From positions 1 to 64,000 of IMG/VR virus record IMGVR_UViG_3300033146_002768: a stretch of 64,000 nucleotides of DNA; one strand, 5' to 3'. Positions 58,168-64,000 of the stretch are shown one piece after another. Numbering within the stretch: position 1 is the stretch's first letter; every line of letters begins with the position of its first letter. Under the pieces are notes generated by a model that saw only the letters and a program-made list of their open reading frames with translations, ran no database searches and was not told the DNA's origin. The position numbers and the translations under genes are program-made.

Positions 58168-59301
58168 ATGGCGAATTTAGAAAAGTTAAAAACATTAATA
58201 CCATTACAAGATTTAGAGCAATCAGCTCAACAGCAAATTTATGATGCTTTAGAATTAGATTTCTTAAAGACATTAGCAATTATGCCTGATTGTCATACAG
58301 GATATACTTTACCTATCGGTGGAGTAGCATTGCTTGATAATGTTATATCTCCTGAATATGTCGGATATGACATTGGATGTGGTATGTGTTGTATTACAAC
58401 TGAAAAGAAAGTTAAGAAACTTAAACCAAGACGACTACATGAAATATTTGATTCAATATATGAGTTGATTCCTGTTGGTGTAGGTGTACCAAGAAAGACT
58501 CCATATGACGATATTGAACATTTTATATCTGCATCTGGTAATAAAGACTTGAATAAAAAAGTTAATCAAAGACAATACATTCAAGTTGGAACCCTTGGAG
58601 CAGGTAATCATTTTATTGAATTAGGTGCTAATCAAGAAGGTTTCCTTACAGTTACTATACATTCAGGATCAAGAAACCCAGGTCATTCGATTGCTGGACA
58701 TTATATGCAATTATCTAAAAATGAAGATAAAGATTTACCAAATGGTTTTCTTCATTTTGATAGTGACTTAGGTCAAGCATATGCTCAAGATTTAAGTTGG
58801 GCATTACAATTTGCTCTTGATAATAGAAAATTAATGATGACTGAAGTTTTAGAAATTCTTAATTTTCAACCTTTTGAAATTCGTAATTATATTAGATCAT
58901 CTAATACTTTTATAAATGAAAATCATAACAATGCAACTATAAGAAAAGATGGTATTCTTCATAGAAAAGGCGCAACTCCTGCTGAGAAAGATGTTCTTGG
59001 AGTTATTCCTGGTACTATGAAATCTGGGGTTTATATTACTAAAGGTCTTGGTAATGAAGAATTTTTATCATCAGCATCTCATGGAGCTGGTCGAAAGATG
59101 AGTAGAAACCAAGCAAAGAAAACCTTTGTTTTAGATCAACATAAGTCGTGGATGAAAGGAATCATTGCTAAAGTTGAAAAGTCTACTTTAGACGAATGTC
59201 ATGGAGCATATAAAGATGTTACTAAGGTAATAAAAGCTCAGGAGGGAATTGTAATTGAAGTAGTTGACTATATTAAACCATTAATTAATATAAAGGGATA
59301 A
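58168..59301 (+). CDS. rtcB: RtcB RNA ligase
   Basis: MPDCH.G, VGYDIGCG, GTLGAGNHF.E, HSGSR, HN, HRKGA, PG.M, HGAGR, IKG. Confidence 0.95.
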   Translation: MANLEKLKTLIPLQDLEQSAQQQIYDALELDFLKTLAIMPDCHTGYTLPIGGVALLDNVISPEYVGYDIGCGMCCITTEKKVKKLKPRRLHEIFDSIYELIPVGVGVPRKTPYDDIEHFISASGNKDLNKKVNQRQYIQVGTLGAGNHFIELGANQEGFLTVTIHSGSRNPGHSIAGHYMQLSKNEDKDLPNGFLHFDSDLGQAYAQDLSWALQFALDNRKLMMTEVLEILNFQPFEIRNYIRSSNTFINENHNNATIRKDGILHRKGATPAEKDVLGVIPGTMKSGVYITKGLGNEEFLSSASHGAGRKMSRNQAKKTFVLDQHKSWMKGIIAKVEKSTLDECHGAYKDVTKVIKAQEGIVIEVVDYIKPLINIKG

Positions 59302-59304
59302 ATC

Positions 59305-59625
59305 ATGGAATTATATTACGAAAACATTAAAGACAAAAATTTTGTTGAGAAACTTGATGGCAAAGTGGTTATGGATTTTATCACAGTTAATACTGGATCT
59401 GTAAAAGATTGGACTATTTTTATGAATTGGGCATCTCATTTTCATAAATTAAAATCTCCATTTGTTATTACCGAGGATATTAGAACAAGATCTAATAAAC
59501 TAGATGATATATACAGAACTTTGTGGGTAGAAGAGAAAGCTCCACCGATGCTTAATGGAGCTAAAGAAAGAATTGAAATAGTGTTTGATATTTCAAAAAA
59601 TAATATAGGGGAATTAAAAAAATGA
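59305..59625 (+). CDS. Hypothetical protein
   Basis: ORF. Confidence 0.55.
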   Translation: MELYYENIKDKNFVEKLDGKVVMDFITVNTGSVKDWTIFMNWASHFHKLKSPFVITEDIRTRSNKLDDIYRTLWVEEKAPPMLNGAKERIEIVFDISKNNIGELKK

Positions 59626-60356
59626 TTAAAGATATGTTTCATATGATCATAGTGTTTCTTTTAACTATATCATTTATGACAATAATTGGTTGTGTCGATA
59701 CTTATGATGAAACAGATGAAATAGCAAATCAAAGATTTGAAAAGTTCACATCTCAGGAAAAGACTATTTATAAAGCAGTTCAAGATGTATGGGGGCAAAG
59801 ACCATTAAAATATGTTAGAGAAGCAGCAGGTAGAAGAGAAACAAGACCTGCTGAAAACATTTTACCATTTAAAGATATTGCTAATGTTATTAAATCTAAT
59901 AATTCAGCATCATTAAAATTAGATGCTGGATGGCAAGCAAGTACCAAGAATAAATATATTAAAGCTCGCTGGGATAGAGTTGATGAAAAATGGTATAGAG
60001 AATTAATGTTGACAATGGGGGTAACTGAAATTGTTAAACAAGATTTGATACCAGAATCTGTAGAAGAAGTTATATCTGATACACCCGAAGTTGAAAAAGA
60101 ATATATTCCTGCAGTTGTTGAAGAATATAATGATAATCAAGATGAAACAATTAAAATTAATTTAGAGGGAATTATTCCAGAATCTAAATATGATGATCTT
60201 TATTATGAAATACGACATTGTGATGAAGCAGTATTTACATATAAACAAATAATTGATGATCGTATATTAACTTGGGATGATTATGAATTATTAATTAGAA
60301 TTTCAATTAAATGTAAAGCAGTTAATATTTTAAATAAAATGGAGACCAGCAAATGA
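59622..60356 (+). CDS. Putative lipoprotein
   Basis: Hydrophobic N-terminus ending in a lipobox-like IIGC. Confidence 0.55.
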   Translation: MIKDMFHMIIVFLLTISFMTIIGCVDTYDETDEIANQRFEKFTSQEKTIYKAVQDVWGQRPLKYVREAAGRRETRPAENILPFKDIANVIKSNNSASLKLDAGWQASTKNKYIKARWDRVDEKWYRELMLTMGVTEIVKQDLIPESVEEVISDTPEVEKEYIPAVVEEYNDNQDETIKINLEGIIPESKYDDLYYEIRHCDEAVFTYKQIIDDRILTWDDYELLIRISIKCKAVNILNKMETSK

Positions 60357-61396
60357 TAAAAATTATTAAAACATCTGACAGCCACACTATTCGTTTTCGC
60401 CCTGAACATGTTAAATTTGTTGAAACAGATGAATATGCAATCATATTCAATCCTAAAACTGGTGAAGAAATTTTAACTGGTATCAATGGTCATCCCGATC
60501 CATTTGTATTACAATACCCAAGTATGCTTGATATCGGTATCATGGGGCATTGTGACAACGCTTGTACCTTTTGTTACCAAGGGGATAAACATGAACCAAA
60601 TATGTCCTTAGATGGATTTAAACTCATTATAGATCAATCTAAAGACTTTGTTAATCAAGTTGCTCTTGGTGGTAGAGGTGATCCAAATCAACATGAATAT
60701 TTTGAAGAAATATTAGAATATTGTCAAGCAAATAAGATAGTGCCCAACTATACTACTAGTGGAATTAATCTTACTGATGAACAAGTTTCTATATCAAAAG
60801 TTTATTGTGGAGCAGTAGCAGTTAGTATGTACAGCAATGCTTATACATGGTCTGCATTAAAAAGATTGATGGATAAAAATATTAAGACAAATATTCATTA
60901 CGTTGTTACTAATGATAGCATAGAAGATGCATGTCAGTTGATTCAAGGTAATGATATGTTTGATAGTAAAGTTGATCTTGATAAATTGAATGCAATTGTA
61001 TTTCTTTTATTTAAACCTGCTGGTAGAGGTAAAGATTTAGACTGGTCACCAACAACTGACCAGATAAAAGTATTTGCTGAATTAATTAAGAAACCTGATT
61101 GTAATTTTAAAATCGGAATGGATAGCTGTTTAGTAAATAAAGTTGCTCAAGTTAGAGAGTTAACTAAAATGGAAGAAATGTATGCAGACACTTGCGAAGG
61201 AGCAAGAATGTCGTGTTATATAACTCCTGATGAAAGATTAGTTCCATGTTCGTTTGGCAATCATGATACATATGGACTTGATATTTCAAAGGGTAATCTT
61301 AAAGAAATGTGGGATAATGGCAAACCTTTCAAGGATTTTAGAGAAGTATTAAATAATAAGAAAGCATGTTGCCCGTTCACAGTTATAGGATTTTAA
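60353..61396 (+). CDS. Radical SAM protein with a SPASM/twitch-like C-terminus
   Basis: CDNACTFC, GGRGDP, TTSG, CEGAR..CYITPD..LVPCSF, CCP. Confidence 0.9.
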   Translation: MIKIIKTSDSHTIRFRPEHVKFVETDEYAIIFNPKTGEEILTGINGHPDPFVLQYPSMLDIGIMGHCDNACTFCYQGDKHEPNMSLDGFKLIIDQSKDFVNQVALGGRGDPNQHEYFEEILEYCQANKIVPNYTTSGINLTDEQVSISKVYCGAVAVSMYSNAYTWSALKRLMDKNIKTNIHYVVTNDSIEDACQLIQGNDMFDSKVDLDKLNAIVFLLFKPAGRGKDLDWSPTTDQIKVFAELIKKPDCNFKIGMDSCLVNKVAQVRELTKMEEMYADTCEGARMSCYITPDERLVPCSFGNHDTYGLDISKGNLKEMWDNGKPFKDFREVLNNKKACCPFTVIGF

Positions 61397-61397
61397 T

Positions 61398-61595
61398 ATG
61401 ACTAATGATAATGAAACATGTCCTAAATGTGGTTCTAAAGATATAAGTTATGAATATGTTTCTTGTATGTGTTGTAGAACATATGAAGGTAATGGTACCA
61501 CTTGTTGGACAGTTCCAAAATGTAACAAATGTGGAAAAACAGGAACATACGGAAGTTCTCAAGGAGGATTTTGGGAAAAACCAAAAGGATGGTAA
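61398..61595 (+). CDS. Small zinc-ribbon protein
   Basis: CPKCGS...CMCC...CNKCG. Confidence 0.6.
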   Translation: MTNDNETCPKCGSKDISYEYVSCMCCRTYEGNGTTCWTVPKCNKCGKTGTYGSSQGGFWEKPKGW

Positions 61596-61596
61596 T

Positions 61597-62028
61597 ATGA
61601 AACTTAAACAAGATTTTATTACAAATAGTTCATCGTCAAATTATCTTGTTTTTATTCCTGAGAATTTTAATTTTTCAAAATTCAAACGTTTAATTGAAAA
61701 ATATGATATAACATATGCTCTTGAAAATAAAGAATGGTTTGATGAAGAAATAGAAACCAAGGAAGATTTTTTAAATGAGTTTGATGATAAATTTGGTGAA
61801 TTAATAAAAGAAGGAGAGATCTGGCAACATAGTATAGCATATGAATCAATAGCAATAGTCTTAGATAAACTTGATTTAGTTATTGGAACATATGAAGGGT
61901 CAGGATCTAATGATGGAGGATCAATGATTAATATCAACCAAGAAAGCATTAGAAAAAAAATGAAAACTGTAATCTCTGGAGGTTGGGGATTAAAATATGG
62001 AGGGTGGGGTCATGAAACTAAAATCTGA
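61597..62028 (+). CDS. TNSSS-motif protein 1
   Basis: Begins MKLKQDFITNSSSSNY at ATG 61597 (the track start 61450 overlaps the previous gene). Confidence 0.75.
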   Translation: MKLKQDFITNSSSSNYLVFIPENFNFSKFKRLIEKYDITYALENKEWFDEEIETKEDFLNEFDDKFGELIKEGEIWQHSIAYESIAIVLDKLDLVIGTYEGSGSNDGGSMININQESIRKKMKTVISGGWGLKYGGWGHETKI

Positions 62029-62365
62029 TTTTATTACTAATAGTTCATCAGCATCTTTTATTATGTCATTTAAAACTAAAGACAATATAAATCATGACGA
62101 GTTTAGAACTTTGTTTAATAAATATTTGGAAAGTTATAAAAGACAACATCCAAATAAATTAAGATTTTGGGATGCATCCATAATTTCAAAAGGTACTGAT
62201 GACAAAGGTGATCTGATTTATACAGTAGAAGATGGAACTACCATGTATAATGATATGCATGATATACCTGAATACATGAGACTATTAATGATTGAATCTT
62301 ATGTTAATGAATATGATTGGGGATTTCAAGTTGTTGGGTTTAAAGTAGAAGATGAACACTATTAA
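62012..62365 (+). CDS. TNSSS-motif protein 2
   Basis: MKLKSDFITNSSSASF. Confidence 0.75.
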   Translation: MKLKSDFITNSSSASFIMSFKTKDNINHDEFRTLFNKYLESYKRQHPNKLRFWDASIISKGTDDKGDLIYTVEDGTTMYNDMHDIPEYMRLLMIESYVNEYDWGFQVVGFKVEDEHY

Positions 62366-62377
62366 AGGAAAATTAAT

Positions 62378-62761
62378 ATGAAACAAAAAACAGATTTTGT
62401 AACTAATTCAAGCTCATGCTCTTTTATCTTTGTTGGTTGGATTTTCAATAAAGAAGAAGGAAAAGTTAAAGAGTTAATGGAAATGTTTGGTTCTAAATAT
62501 GATCCAGAATTTAGTGATTCTGAAAATATTTATGAAGTTTATGAAATTGATAATAATAACGGTCCTGATATTGTAATTGGAGATTATGATAATGGACTTA
62601 ATGAAGATAAAATATACGTAGGTAATCATAACAGAGTCAGTGAAGATGATACTATGGAATTATCAATTCAAGATATTATTGATTCTAATAAAGAAGTCAA
62701 AGATAAAGAAGGGTTTGATCCCAAAGATATTAAAATAGTCTCGAGGATTATGATGTGTTGA
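62378..62761 (+). CDS. TNSSS-motif protein 3
   Basis: MKQKTDFVTNSSSCSF. Confidence 0.75.
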   Translation: MKQKTDFVTNSSSCSFIFVGWIFNKEEGKVKELMEMFGSKYDPEFSDSENIYEVYEIDNNNGPDIVIGDYDNGLNEDKIYVGNHNRVSEDDTMELSIQDIIDSNKEVKDKEGFDPKDIKIVSRIMMC

Positions 62762-62762
62762 T

Positions 62763-63308
62763 ATGAAAATTAAACAAGACTTTGTTACAAATAGCTCAAG
62801 TACTTCTTTTACCTTTGTATTTAAAGGTACTACGAGAAATGATCTATTTGAACAACTTTATAAAAATAAAGAAGAATTTAATCTGGAGTATGATACCTGG
62901 GATGATAGATTATTTAAAATGGAAGTTTGGGATATAATATCAACTATATTAGGTTTTATTAAAAAAGATAAATATGACAGATATTATAAACCAGATATTT
63001 ATCCAGTTGCATCATTAGTAGAATATATTGAAAAAGAAATTCAAGATATGAAAAAGTATATTCAGGATACAGATGATGGCAATAAGTCTATGATTAGTTA
63101 TTATGATTCTGATATAAATAAAAGAGAAAAAGATCTCAAAGAAATAAATAGATTAATTGATACAGGTGAAATATTTTCAACATTTGAATTATCGTTTGGT
63201 AATGATGGTGTTGTTAGTGGTGATTTAGGAACTGTTATGGAGATGGAATGTGTTTGGGATGATTATGAGAATAAGGAATTTTTTATAGTCCGTGATAGTC
63301 AACATTAA
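62763..63308 (+). CDS. TNSSS-motif protein 4
   Basis: MKIKQDFVTNSSSTSF. Confidence 0.75.
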   Translation: MKIKQDFVTNSSSTSFTFVFKGTTRNDLFEQLYKNKEEFNLEYDTWDDRLFKMEVWDIISTILGFIKKDKYDRYYKPDIYPVASLVEYIEKEIQDMKKYIQDTDDGNKSMISYYDSDINKREKDLKEINRLIDTGEIFSTFELSFGNDGVVSGDLGTVMEMECVWDDYENKEFFIVRDSQH

Positions 63309-63343
63309 AAGAAATTATTTTCATATAAAGGAACATATTAAAA

Positions 63344-63721
63344 ATGAAAGACTTTAAATATTATACATTGTTTGGAGTTCGTCTTAGAAGAGGTGACAAC
63401 ATGATTCCTAAATATGATAGGGATTTTCTATTAAGATGGACTTCACATGAAAGAACTAATGCCGATAGAGCTAAAGCTATGGTTGATAATAAGATGTTTA
63501 AAACAACTGATGGTCAAGCTATTGCTGCTGTTGGTATTGGAAATGAAGCTCATTCTATTCATGGTATAAAATTGAGAGTAATTTATAATCCAGAAATATC
63601 TAGTCATCTATATGAAACAGATTTTGTTTTGACAGATGAATGGTTAGATTTATTAATTGACTCGGCTAACTATTCCGATCATGGTAAAAAAATGTTAGCT
63701 GAGTCTAAAATCCGTTTATAG
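63344..63721 (+). CDS. Hypothetical protein
   Basis: ORF with AAGGA RBS. Confidence 0.55.
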   Translation: MKDFKYYTLFGVRLRRGDNMIPKYDRDFLLRWTSHERTNADRAKAMVDNKMFKTTDGQAIAAVGIGNEAHSIHGIKLRVIYNPEISSHLYETDFVLTDEWLDLLIDSANYSDHGKKMLAESKIRL

Positions 63722-63730
63722 GAGAATGAT

Positions 63731-64000
63731 ATGAAACAGAAGCAAGATTTTATTACAAATTCAAGTAGTTGTAGTTTTGTTGCTTGGGGAATTTCAATGA
63801 ATGCTGAAGCTCTAAAAGAAACATGCGGGAAGAGATTATTTGAATTAAAACAAAGAAAAGATGACTTAGAAAAAGCTAAAAAAGCAACTGAGAGTGGAGC
63901 TTTTATGGTAATTAAAAGTGATTTAAAAGAAGACCCAAAAGAATTAGAAGAATTTCTTGAAGATGTTGACTTTGTTTGGGAAATTGAAAGTTTAATTCCA
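63731..64000 (+). CDS. TNSSS-motif protein 5, 3'-truncated by the window end (not in track)
   Basis: GGAG RBS; MKQKQDFITNSSSCSFVAWG..., open to the end of the window. Confidence 0.75.
   Translation, partial: MKQKQDFITNSSSCSFVAWGISMNAEALKETCGKRLFELKQRKDDLEKAKKATESGAFMVIKSDLKEDPKELEEFLEDVDFVWEIESLIP

What the first reader, a model, noticed from the sequence alone, without database searches (positions are those of the whole stretch)
60353..64000. Radical SAM gene followed by five proteins sharing only an N-terminal MKxKxDF(I/V)TNSSS motif
Seen: ORFs at 61597, 62012, 62378, 62763 and 63731 all begin MK(L/Q/I)K(Q/S/T)DF(I/V)TNSSSx(S/N)(F/Y), with the motif at exactly the same distance from Met. 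The rest of each acidic protein is dissimilar. They follow a SPASM/twitch-type radical SAM and a small Zn-ribbon gene. Known: SPASM/twitch enzymes often modify peptides or proteins at short motifs, including Ser/Cys residues. Inference: a maturase plus a diversified substrate array with a shared recognition or modification tag. Alternatively the N-S-S-S is an autoprocessing site exposing an N-terminal Ser. This is a candidate uncharacterised post-translational system.
Basis: partly seen in the sequence, partly recalled or inferred. Interest (0 to 1): 0.72.

Follow-up and report, generated by a model that had tools for sequence, protein, structure and literature searches.

The report
Radical SAM enzyme with tagged-protein array
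A large phage carries a radical SAM enzyme next to a row of fast-evolving acidic proteins that share only an almost invariant 16-residue start, and the same enzyme-plus-tagged-protein pair also sits inside bacterial Avs2-like immune operons, so it is probably an uncharacterised protein-modification module used in phage-bacterium conflict.

Summary
It holds five ORFs starting MKxKxDF[IV]TNSSS, and the 207-kb phage record holds two more. The DNA pattern is expected 0.00 times by chance.

Ser codons in the motif switch between AGY and TCN, so selection acts on the peptide. Outside the first ~20 residues the paralogs are not detectably related.

The gene at 60353-61396 is a radical SAM enzyme. Its nearest solved relatives are peptide-modifying SPASM/twitch enzymes such as SuiB, PqqE and SkfB. 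In this clade the SPASM tail is truncated.

- 21 of 31 viral and 28 of 35 cellular loci found through the tag carry a homolog of this enzyme.
- 57 of 80 viral loci found through the enzyme carry tagged ORFs, mostly starting at its stop codon.
- The enzyme tree splits into a cellular and a viral clade, and both are linked to tagged genes.

In bacteria the pair belongs to a mobile four-gene cassette: Avs2-like STAND NTPase, a ~130-aa protein, the tagged protein, then the enzyme.

Best reading: the enzyme modifies the N-terminal tag, and the phage array has a conflict role, possibly counter-defence. The modification is inferred, not shown. The Zn-ribbon gene is a window-specific insertion.

The parts
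60353..61396 (+). Radical SAM enzyme, 347 aa. It has a CxxxCxxC motif at C67/C71/C74, auxiliary-cluster Cys at C259, C281, C299 and C340/341, and a truncated SPASM (twitch-like) C-terminus. Residues 1-45 form a five-strand beta mini-domain.
   Evidence: Pfam Radical_SAM scores 30.8 bits (cut-off 29.5) and SPASM 20.4 (cut-off 21.5); phrog_7293 matches at 1e-32. Conserved Cys come from alignments A4/A5. The PDB profile search finds SuiB at 1e-13, then PqqE, SkfB and BtrN. The AF2 model has pLDDT 90, and Foldseek gives SuiB at TM 0.70-0.72.
61398..61595 (+). 65-aa Cys-rich Zn-ribbon-like ORF. It is a window-specific insertion between the enzyme and the array, and not part of the conserved module.
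   Evidence: Only weak Zn-ribbon Pfam matches. It is absent in L003, L006 and L008, where the first tagged gene starts 1-2 nt after the enzyme's stop codon.
61597..62028 (+). Tagged protein 1, 143 aa, net charge -8. Its C-terminus (GGWGLKYGGWGHE-type) is conserved in orthologs.
   Evidence: Orthologs in L003/L006/L008 are 44-46% identical over the full length.
62012..62365 (+). Tagged protein 2, 117 aa, net charge -6. It overlaps protein 1 by 17 nt.
   Evidence: Its N-terminus matches phrog_7397.
62378..62761 (+). Tagged protein 3, 127 aa, net charge -14.
62763..63308 (+). Tagged protein 4, 181 aa, net charge -14. It has a second conserved motif, FG(D)NDG, near the C-terminus.
   Evidence: Full-length homologs P0002-P0020. 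A profile search finds 654 representative clusters at E<=1e-3. The AF2 model has pLDDT 83, with residues 1-10 below 50. No PDB fold match.
63344..63721 (+). 125-aa ORF without the tag, conserved at the same place in the array of relatives. Role unknown.
   Evidence: No Pfam, NCBIfam or PHROG match.
63731..64000 (+). Tagged protein 5, cut by the window end. The complete protein is 151 aa, ends at genome 64186 and has net charge -16.

Best explanation
The region is a two-part module. One part is a SuiB/PqqE-like radical SAM enzyme. The other is a set of proteins that each carry, at their very first residue, a near-invariant 16-residue tag (M-K-x-[KR]-x-D-F-[VI]-T-N-S-S-S-x-S-[FY]).

Most likely mechanism:
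- The tag is a flexible N-terminal extension that enters the enzyme like a RiPP precursor.
- The enzyme modifies it post-translationally by radical chemistry on one of the invariant residues (D6, F7, T9, N10 or S11-13).
- The modified tag then acts as a common handle on bodies that differ from one another.

The phage has multiplied the tagged gene: seven copies here and up to ten in related jumbo phages. The bodies evolve much faster than the enzyme.

In bacteria the same pair is the downstream half of a mobile four-gene cassette headed by an Avs2-like STAND NTPase with swappable effector domains. I therefore read the module as part of phage-host conflict. The phage array is plausibly a set of mimics or inhibitors of that host system.

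Shown: tag conservation at peptide level, genomic coupling of tag and enzyme in both directions, the enzyme's fold class, and the STAND context.

Inferred: that the tag is the substrate, the chemistry involved, and the counter-defence role.
For: Tag.
- Over 176 unique family members, positions 6-13 are 97-100% conserved when V/I at position 8 are pooled. The motif starts at residue 1 of the ORF in 156 of the hits aligned from the first profile positions.
- Serine codons vary between AGY and TCN.
- Residues 1-12 are coil, and residues 1-10 have pLDDT below 50, in an otherwise confident model.
- The bodies are unrelated by hhalign once the tag is removed. The exception is the 65219 copy against the bacterial protein (prob 91%).
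- The tag also heads 472-aa and 668-aa (BRCT) proteins.

Coupling.
- 21 of 31 viral loci and 28 of 35 cellular loci found through the tag contain an enzyme homolog.
- Two apparent exceptions carry the enzyme elsewhere on the same contig, with 10 tagged genes each.
- At least 510 viral contigs encode an enzyme relative. Of the best 80 loci, 57 have tagged ORFs, mostly starting at the enzyme's stop codon.
- The enzyme tree has a cellular clade (SH-aLRT 96) and a viral clade, both tied to tagged genes.
- In bacteria the tagged gene and the enzyme gene often overlap.

Enzyme class.
- SuiB 1e-13 by profile and TM 0.70-0.72 by fold, followed by PqqE, SkfB, CteB and anSME.

Evolutionary rates.
- The enzyme is 74-77% identical to L006/L008, while tagged orthologs are 32-55% identical.

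Conflict context.
- The cassette is STAND (PADLOC Avs2 1e-16 to 1e-24, with Trypsin_2, Nuc_deoxyrib_tr, SMEK_N or HamA-like heads), then A, then the tagged protein, then the enzyme. It occurs in Sporomusa, Desulforamulus, Nitrospiraceae, Bacteroidales, Agrobacterium pAt and Vibrio.
- One bacterial subfamily of the tagged protein is 70-98% identical across phyla.
- PMC11564622 reports a KpAvs2 operon with a radical SAM protein (Avap1) and a small accessory protein (Avap2) that are needed for full defence.
Against: No modification has been observed.
- The complex prediction (enzyme, 181-aa protein, SAM and 2 clusters) scored 0.18, below the 0.32 mark, and counts as no answer.
- 23 of 80 enzyme loci show no tagged ORF within 10 kb, mostly in one subclade with other neighbours. 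Those contigs are only ~12% complete.
- Enzyme homologs at 29% identity in T4-like Klebsiella/Enterobacter/RB16 phages have no tagged gene anywhere in the RB16 genome.
- No PqqD-like recognition domain was detected.
- A fixed distance of a substrate motif from Met1 is unusual for RiPP-type recognition.
- The phage record (66% complete) has no STAND gene and no homolog of the bacterial 'A' protein, so the counter-defence role rests on analogy.
- Homology of this pair to Avap1/Avap2 could not be tested. The Pfam family cited for Avap2 (PF19902) matches none of these proteins with HMMER.
Confidence: 0.5

Rival explanations
1. The tagged proteins are partners rather than substrates. The tag docks them onto the enzyme, or onto a common third protein, and the enzyme acts on something else, for example a nucleotide or other small molecule that the tagged proteins then bind, carry or sequester.
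For: Bacterial gene pairs overlap, as is usual for complex subunits. The Ser/Thr/Asn-rich tag and the Gly/Asp-rich FG(D)NDG or GxLSSD loop look like anion-binding loops. Viperins appear among the fold matches at TM 0.5-0.66, and PADLOC pVip models hit the radical SAM core.
Against: The best fold and profile matches are peptide-modifying enzymes, not viperin. The NCBIfam viperin model scores 14 bits against a cut-off of 180. One enzyme gene faces 7-10 tagged genes in phages, which fits enzyme-substrate better than fixed subunits. The authors of PMC11564622 saw no viperin-type nucleotides and no NTP pocket for Avap1, but homology of Avap1 to this enzyme is untested.
Confidence: 0.22
2. The tag is a self-processing site. 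Cleavage at Asn10-Ser11, or between the serines, exposes an N-terminal Ser or creates a pyruvoyl group. The enzyme is either unrelated or acts afterwards.
For: Asn-Ser and Ser-Ser bonds are the kind of site used by asparagine lyases, Ntn hydrolases and pyruvoyl enzymes (my own knowledge, not tested here). N10 and S12 are conserved in 100% of 176 members, S11 in 99% and S13 in 97%.
Against: Self-processing sites sit inside a conserved fold that catalyses the cleavage. Here the bodies are not detectably related, and the tag is an unconfident tail. This reading does not explain the tight link to a radical SAM enzyme.
Confidence: 0.08
3. The tag is an address label, like the capsid-targeting sequence shared by the otherwise unrelated T4 internal proteins. 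It would send diverse proteins into the prohead for injection. The link to the enzyme would be synteny only.
For: The array lies just upstream of SPFH/Band7, structural genes and the large terminase. The proteins are small, acidic, diverse and fast-evolving, as injected anti-restriction proteins are (my own knowledge).
Against: The same tag heads a protein of a chromosomal and plasmid-borne bacterial STAND cassette that has no capsid genes. The link to the enzyme holds across deep clades and varied gene orders. The tag has no Glu where the T4 protease motif, as I recall it, needs one.
Confidence: 0.06
4. The shared start reflects a DNA or RNA signal (a translation-initiation region or recombination site) copied with each gene, not a peptide function.
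For: All copies start with ATGAAA and have purine-rich upstream sequence.
Against: Serine codons switch between AGY and TCN and third positions vary, while the peptide is invariant. The peptide is conserved from 29% GC phages to GC-rich bacteria.
Confidence: 0.02

Closest known systems
KpAvs2 operon accessory proteins Avap1 (radical SAM) and Avap2 (Bechon et al. 2024, PMC11564622)
   Same: An Avs2-type STAND NTPase is encoded with a radical SAM protein and a small accessory protein. According to its authors, the radical SAM protein is not viperin-like in its pocket. Homolog operons are reported from Nitrospirae and Syntrophobacterales, taxa in which I also find the cassette.
   Different: I could not obtain the Avap1/Avap2 sequences, so homology is untested. 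PF19902, the family cited for Avap2, matches neither the tagged protein nor the 'A' protein with HMMER. The cassettes seen here have two small proteins and shorter STANDs (850-1180 aa). The window itself is a phage with no STAND gene.
RiPP radical SAM/SPASM maturases (SuiB, PqqE, SkfB, CteB)
   Same: These are the best sequence-profile and fold matches. Both have a conserved short N-terminal peptide on adjacent, multiplied genes.
   Different: No PqqD-like recognition element was detected. The window clade lacks the distal SPASM cysteines. The substrates would be 117-181-aa (up to 668-aa) proteins whose conserved part is the first 16 residues, not a leader followed by a short core.
Anaerobic sulfatase-maturating enzyme (anSME/AtsB)
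   Same: It is a SPASM-type radical SAM enzyme that oxidises a Ser or Cys within a short motif of a full-size protein. It appears among the fold matches at TM 0.57-0.60.
   Different: The tag has no (C/S)xPxR motif. No NCBIfam match to an anSME model was listed.
T4 internal proteins with a shared N-terminal capsid-targeting sequence (from my own knowledge)
   Same: A hyperplastic locus of unrelated small proteins that share only about 10-16 N-terminal residues.
   Different: The tag also occurs in bacterial non-viral cassettes and is coupled to a radical SAM enzyme.
Radical SAM plus stand-alone peptide effector in FtsH ternary conflict systems (Kaur et al. 2020, PMC7159879)
   Same: A conflict system in which a radical SAM enzyme is predicted to modify a separately encoded peptide.
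   Different: The NTPase core differs (vWA-MoxR/FtsH against STAND). No NCBIfam peptide or maturase model of that system matched.

Membership tests
Radical SAM superfamily | CxxxCxxC cluster motif and a Pfam PF04055 score above the gathering cut-off | tested here: met
   C67/C71/C74; C67 and C74 are invariant and C71 is at least 90% conserved in 24 homologs. PF04055 scores 30.8 bits against a cut-off of 29.5.
SPASM subfamily (two auxiliary clusters) | Full 7-Cys C-terminal motif including the distal CxxCxxxxxCxxxC-type block | tested here: not met
   The window enzyme ends at ...CCPFTVIGF. The block CxxxxxCxGGCP...C, present in the bacterial and some phage homologs, is missing. PF13186 scores 20.4 bits against a cut-off of 21.5.
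Twitch-type radical SAM (one auxiliary cluster) | Shortened SPASM domain with enough conserved Cys for one extra cluster | tested here: inconclusive
   C259, C281, C299 and C340 are invariant. BtrN matches weakly by profile (8e-5). Cluster content cannot be determined from sequence.
RiPP maturase with recognition element | PqqD-like RRE domain (winged helix with a three-strand sheet) | tested here: not met
   No PqqD Pfam match. Residues 1-45 are modelled as five beta strands without helices.
anSME / AtsB | Substrate motif (C/S)xPxR and a match to the family model | tested here: not met
   The tag logo has no Pro or Arg at the needed positions. No anSME model is among the NCBIfam hits.
Prokaryotic viperin (pVip) | Family-model score above the cut-off | tested here: not met
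   NCBIfam viperin_w_prok scores 14.2 bits against a cut-off of 180. PADLOC pVip covers only the N-terminal radical SAM core.
Mycofactocin maturase MftC | Family-model score above the cut-off | tested here: not met
   TIGR03962 scores 41.1 bits against a cut-off of 265.
KpAvs2-Avap1-Avap2 type operon | Radical SAM gene and small accessory gene next to an Avs2-type STAND NTPase | tested here: not met
   Not met for the window: no STAND was found in the phage record. It is met for the bacterial relatives of the pair.
KpAvs2-Avap1-Avap2 type operon | Accessory protein related to DUF6375 (PF19902) | tested here: inconclusive
   The PF19902 HMM finds nothing in the phage or in five genomes that carry the cassette. 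The published link was by HHpred, which I could not reproduce because I had no DUF6375 sequences (one search found none in 401 genomes).
T4-type capsid-targeting sequence | N-terminal tag ending in a prohead-protease site (L/I-x-E, as I recall it), restricted to virion-packaged phage proteins | tested here: not met
   The tag consensus has no Glu. The tag is also present in bacterial chromosomal and plasmid cassettes.

The most novel reading that the evidence does not exclude
A radical-SAM-installed modification of a protein's extreme N-terminus is a shared currency of phage-bacterium conflict. On this reading, Avs2-like STAND receptors use one modified tagged protein as a built-in regulator or bait. 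Large phages carry their own copy of the enzyme plus 7-10 diversified tagged proteins that mimic, jam or exploit that step. That would be a post-translational-modification-based counter-defence with no described precedent.
Probability: 0.2. Interest if true: 0.9.

Novelty: new variant of a known kind. Interest (0 to 1): 0.72.

Why it matters
Radical SAM enzymes that act on peptides are known mainly from natural-product pathways. Here a distinct clade is coupled to an N-terminal tag on full-size proteins.
- At least 510 viral contigs encode a relative of the enzyme.
- The tagged family has 654 representative clusters.
- Cassettes occur in Vibrio, Agrobacterium, Bacteroidales, Clostridia and sulfate reducers.
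- Everything is annotated as hypothetical.

If the tag is modified, this defines a new substrate class and probably new chemistry.

It would also explain the unexplained accessory genes of a published Avs2 defence operon. And it would give a direct handle on how phages with large genomes deal with STAND-type immunity.

The system is easy to test, because it needs only two genes and a 16-residue target.

Tried and rejected
- **Complex prediction.** Enzyme, 181-aa tagged protein, SAM and two clusters scored below the mark, so it is unusable either way. I dropped those rows.
- **Fold searches of the tagged protein.** Foldseek against PDB, VIA wide and AFDB clusters found nothing beyond a generic helical hairpin and two unnamed relatives. 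The Atlas gave only unnamed viral and bacterial clusters.
- **Family libraries.** Pfam, NCBIfam and PADLOC found no family for the tagged proteins or for the bacterial 'A' protein. PHROGs gave only a weak N-terminal match to phrog_7397 for two tagged copies.
- **PF19902/DUF6375.** No hits in the phage, in five cassette genomes, or in 401 genomes of one phylum.
- **Cultured phages.** There is no nucleotide match to the region and no tblastn match to two tagged proteins in 50,697 records.
- **'A' protein and STAND in the phage.** Neither was found.
- **Literature.** The string TNSSS gave only unrelated uses. Avap1/Avap2 appear in one paper only.
- **Other checks.** No sequencing run was listed for the region. 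The promoter and terminator scan was no different from shuffles. No Rfam intron model matched the split enzyme gene of relatives.
- **Photobacterium plasmid hit.** It turned out to be an ordinary RRE-type maturase, unrelated to this clade.
- **Ideas rejected.** HAD-like, PP-loop, RuvC/ASKHA-like or Toprim readings of the motif: the spacing and second motifs do not fit, and no profile supports them.

Full report
**What is in the sequence**

The window is the first 64 kb of a single 207,111-bp, 29% GC virus record (66% complete by CheckV's estimate). Nearly all genes lie on the + strand.

From 60353 the order is as follows:
- a 347-aa radical SAM protein;
- a 65-aa Cys-rich ORF;
- four ORFs of 143, 117, 127 and 181 aa;
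- a 125-aa ORF without the motif;
- a fifth motif ORF that runs past the window end (151 aa in full).

All five motif ORFs begin MKxKxDF[IV]TNSSS. The back-translated pattern occurs five times in the window, against 0.00 in shuffles.

Two more copies lie beyond the window, at genome 65219-65581 and 177736-177915. An HMM made from bacterial relatives picks out exactly these seven ORFs.

The serines use both codon families, so the peptide is what is conserved, not the DNA.

**How far the proteins are alike**

By BLASTP the paralogs match only over the first 20-40 residues. With 22 residues removed, profile-profile comparison of the ortholog groups is insignificant for every pair. The one exception is the 65219 copy against the bacterial form (probability 91%).

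Each paralog has a full-length ortholog in related phage contigs at 32-55% identity, while the enzyme is 74-77% identical in the same contigs. So the array is old, and its bodies evolve much faster than the enzyme.

Over 176 unique family members:
- positions 6-13 are 97-100% conserved, with V and I at position 8 pooled;
- the motif begins at residue 1 of the ORF in 156 of the hits aligned from the first profile positions;
- median length is 137 aa and median net charge is -9.

The tag also heads 472-aa and 668-aa proteins, the latter with a BRCT domain.

The 181-aa paralog gives an AF2 model of pLDDT 83 in which residues 1-12 are coil and residues 1-10 have pLDDT below 50. The fold has no solved relative.

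**The enzyme**

Pfam Radical_SAM is just above its cut-off and SPASM just below it.

Alignment of 27 homologs shows the CxxxCxxC motif at C67/C71/C74 and four further invariant Cys. It also shows that the window's clade has lost the distal Cys block of SPASM, which bacterial and some phage homologs keep.

The nearest solved proteins are peptide-modifying enzymes:
- SuiB at 1e-13 by profile and TM 0.70-0.72 by fold;
- then PqqE, SkfB, CteB, TigE and anSME.

All NCBIfam equivalog models score far below their cut-offs. No RRE domain is detected. Residues 1-45 form a small beta domain.

**Co-occurrence**

Starting from the tag:
- 31 viral loci were retrieved, of which 21 contain an enzyme homolog on the same strand within about 6 kb. 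Most of the rest are cut at a contig end.
- Two apparent exceptions are 245-269-kb contigs that carry the enzyme elsewhere, plus ten tagged genes each.
- Of 35 loci from cellular genome assemblies, 28 contain the enzyme.

Starting from the enzyme:
- At least 510 viral contigs encode a relative.
- Of the best 80 loci, 57 hold one to ten tagged ORFs, mostly beginning at the enzyme's stop codon.
- The 23 loci without any fall mainly in one subclade with other neighbours, on contigs only ~12% complete.

The enzyme tree separates a cellular clade (SH-aLRT 96) from a viral clade, and both are tied to tagged genes. The link is therefore older than that split and is not just synteny among close relatives.

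A more distant enzyme clade occurs in T4-like enterobacterial phages at 29% identity. It has no tagged gene anywhere in the RB16 genome.

**The bacterial context**

In 18 of the cellular loci the pair is the end of a four-gene cassette:
1. a STAND/NACHT NTPase of 850-1180 aa;
2. a helical ~130-aa protein ('A');
3. the tagged protein (~135 aa, ending in W);
4. the enzyme.

The NTPases match PADLOC Avs2 models (1e-16 to 1e-24). They carry different N-terminal heads: trypsin-like, nucleoside deoxyribosyltransferase/TIR-like, SMEK, or HamA/LmuA-like. Sometimes an Avs1a/LmuA-like metallo-beta-lactamase gene lies upstream.

In one genome 'A' is fused to the end of the NTPase.

The cassette occurs in:
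- Sporomusa, Desulforamulus, Nitrospiraceae, Arcobacteraceae and Bacteroidales;
- Agrobacterium tumefaciens pAt;
- Vibrio, where it sits in two different places, one beside other defence genes.

One subfamily of the tagged protein is 70-98% identical across Vibrio, Methylomonas, Prosthecochloris, Cytophagales and Electrothrix, which indicates horizontal spread.

All of these genes are annotated as hypothetical. No Pfam family covers 'A' or the tagged protein. The phage record has neither a STAND gene nor an 'A' homolog.

**Literature**

One paper, PMC11564622, describes a Klebsiella Avs2 operon with two accessory genes: Avap1 (radical SAM) and Avap2 (a small protein with an HHpred link to DUF6375).
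- Avap2 binds Avs2 and is needed for defence.
- Avap1 is needed against some phages.
- The function of both is unknown, and Avap1 did not look like a viperin to its authors.
- Homolog operons are listed there from Nitrospirae and Syntrophobacterales.

I could not obtain those sequences, and PF19902 matches nothing here with HMMER. The identity of the two systems is therefore likely but untested.

Kaur et al. 2020 predicted a radical SAM enzyme that modifies a separately encoded peptide effector, in another NTPase conflict system.

**Interpretation**

The best-supported account is an enzyme-substrate module in which a SuiB-like radical SAM enzyme modifies the first 16 residues of the tagged proteins.

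The arguments for the substrate reading are:
- the extreme, position-fixed conservation of a flexible tail on unrelated bodies;
- the fold class of the enzyme;
- the one-enzyme-to-many-targets ratio in phages;
- the two-way genomic coupling.

The chemistry is unknown. Candidates from known relatives are oxidation of a serine, a carbon-carbon or ether cross-link involving F7, T9 or N10, or epimerisation.

The STAND context, the swappable effector heads, the horizontal mobility and the fast evolution of the phage copies place the module in phage-host conflict. Whether the phage copies mimic or block the host protein is a hypothesis.

The rivals, with my reasons for ranking them lower, are given in their own section:
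- partner rather than substrate;
- self-processing site;
- capsid-targeting label;
- nucleic-acid signal.

**Verdict**

The Zn-ribbon gene is an unrelated insertion. The most interesting new fact is the shared use of this pair by large phages and by Avs2-like bacterial cassettes.

Noticed in passing
L003:6608-8534 (also L009): In two related phage contigs the radical SAM gene is split after the conserved CGAVAVS block by a 238-aa HNH-endonuclease ORF. This leaves 177-aa and 223-aa halves. No Rfam intron model matches the insert.
   Followed up: partly
window 61398-61595: The 65-aa Cys-rich Zn-ribbon-like ORF is present only in this phage. In L003, L006 and L008 the first tagged gene follows the enzyme directly.
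   Followed up: yes
L002:3737-3916 (genome 177736-177915): The seventh tagged ORF is only 59 aa, basic and has 5 Cys, more like a peptide precursor. Its stop overlaps the start of a 276-aa metallophosphoesterase-like ORF (L002:3913-4743).
   Followed up: no
L001:5362-5967 (genome 64361-64966): A 201-aa ORF inside the array, conserved in relatives, looks like a class I methyltransferase by eye. It has only a weak Pfam hit (Methyltransf_12, E 0.066).
   Followed up: partly
window 58168-59301: An RtcB RNA ligase gene (Pfam 3.5e-83) lies 1 kb upstream of the enzyme.
   Followed up: no
window 59622-60356: A 244-aa ORF has a lipoprotein-like start (hydrophobic stretch followed by Cys), and its stop overlaps the enzyme's start codon.
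   Followed up: no
L164 and L165 (Vibrio), L082 (Agrobacterium pAt): The bacterial four-gene cassette (SMEK-STAND, A, tagged protein, enzyme) is inserted at different chromosomal sites in Vibrio and on a conjugative plasmid in Agrobacterium. Its tagged protein is 70-98% identical across phyla.
   Followed up: partly
L116, L126, L129, L144, L150, L159: In one viral subclade the enzyme has no tagged neighbour. Instead it is flanked by a conserved small membrane protein upstream, and by a ~120-aa membrane protein and a ~160-aa secreted protein downstream.
   Followed up: no
L072:11489-12394 and L072:13314-14921: In Sporomusa and Desulforamulus the cassette is followed by an M1E1E6-like protein. 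In Sporomusa a PRTase-CE protein also lies nearby. Both are domains seen in other conflict systems.
   Followed up: no
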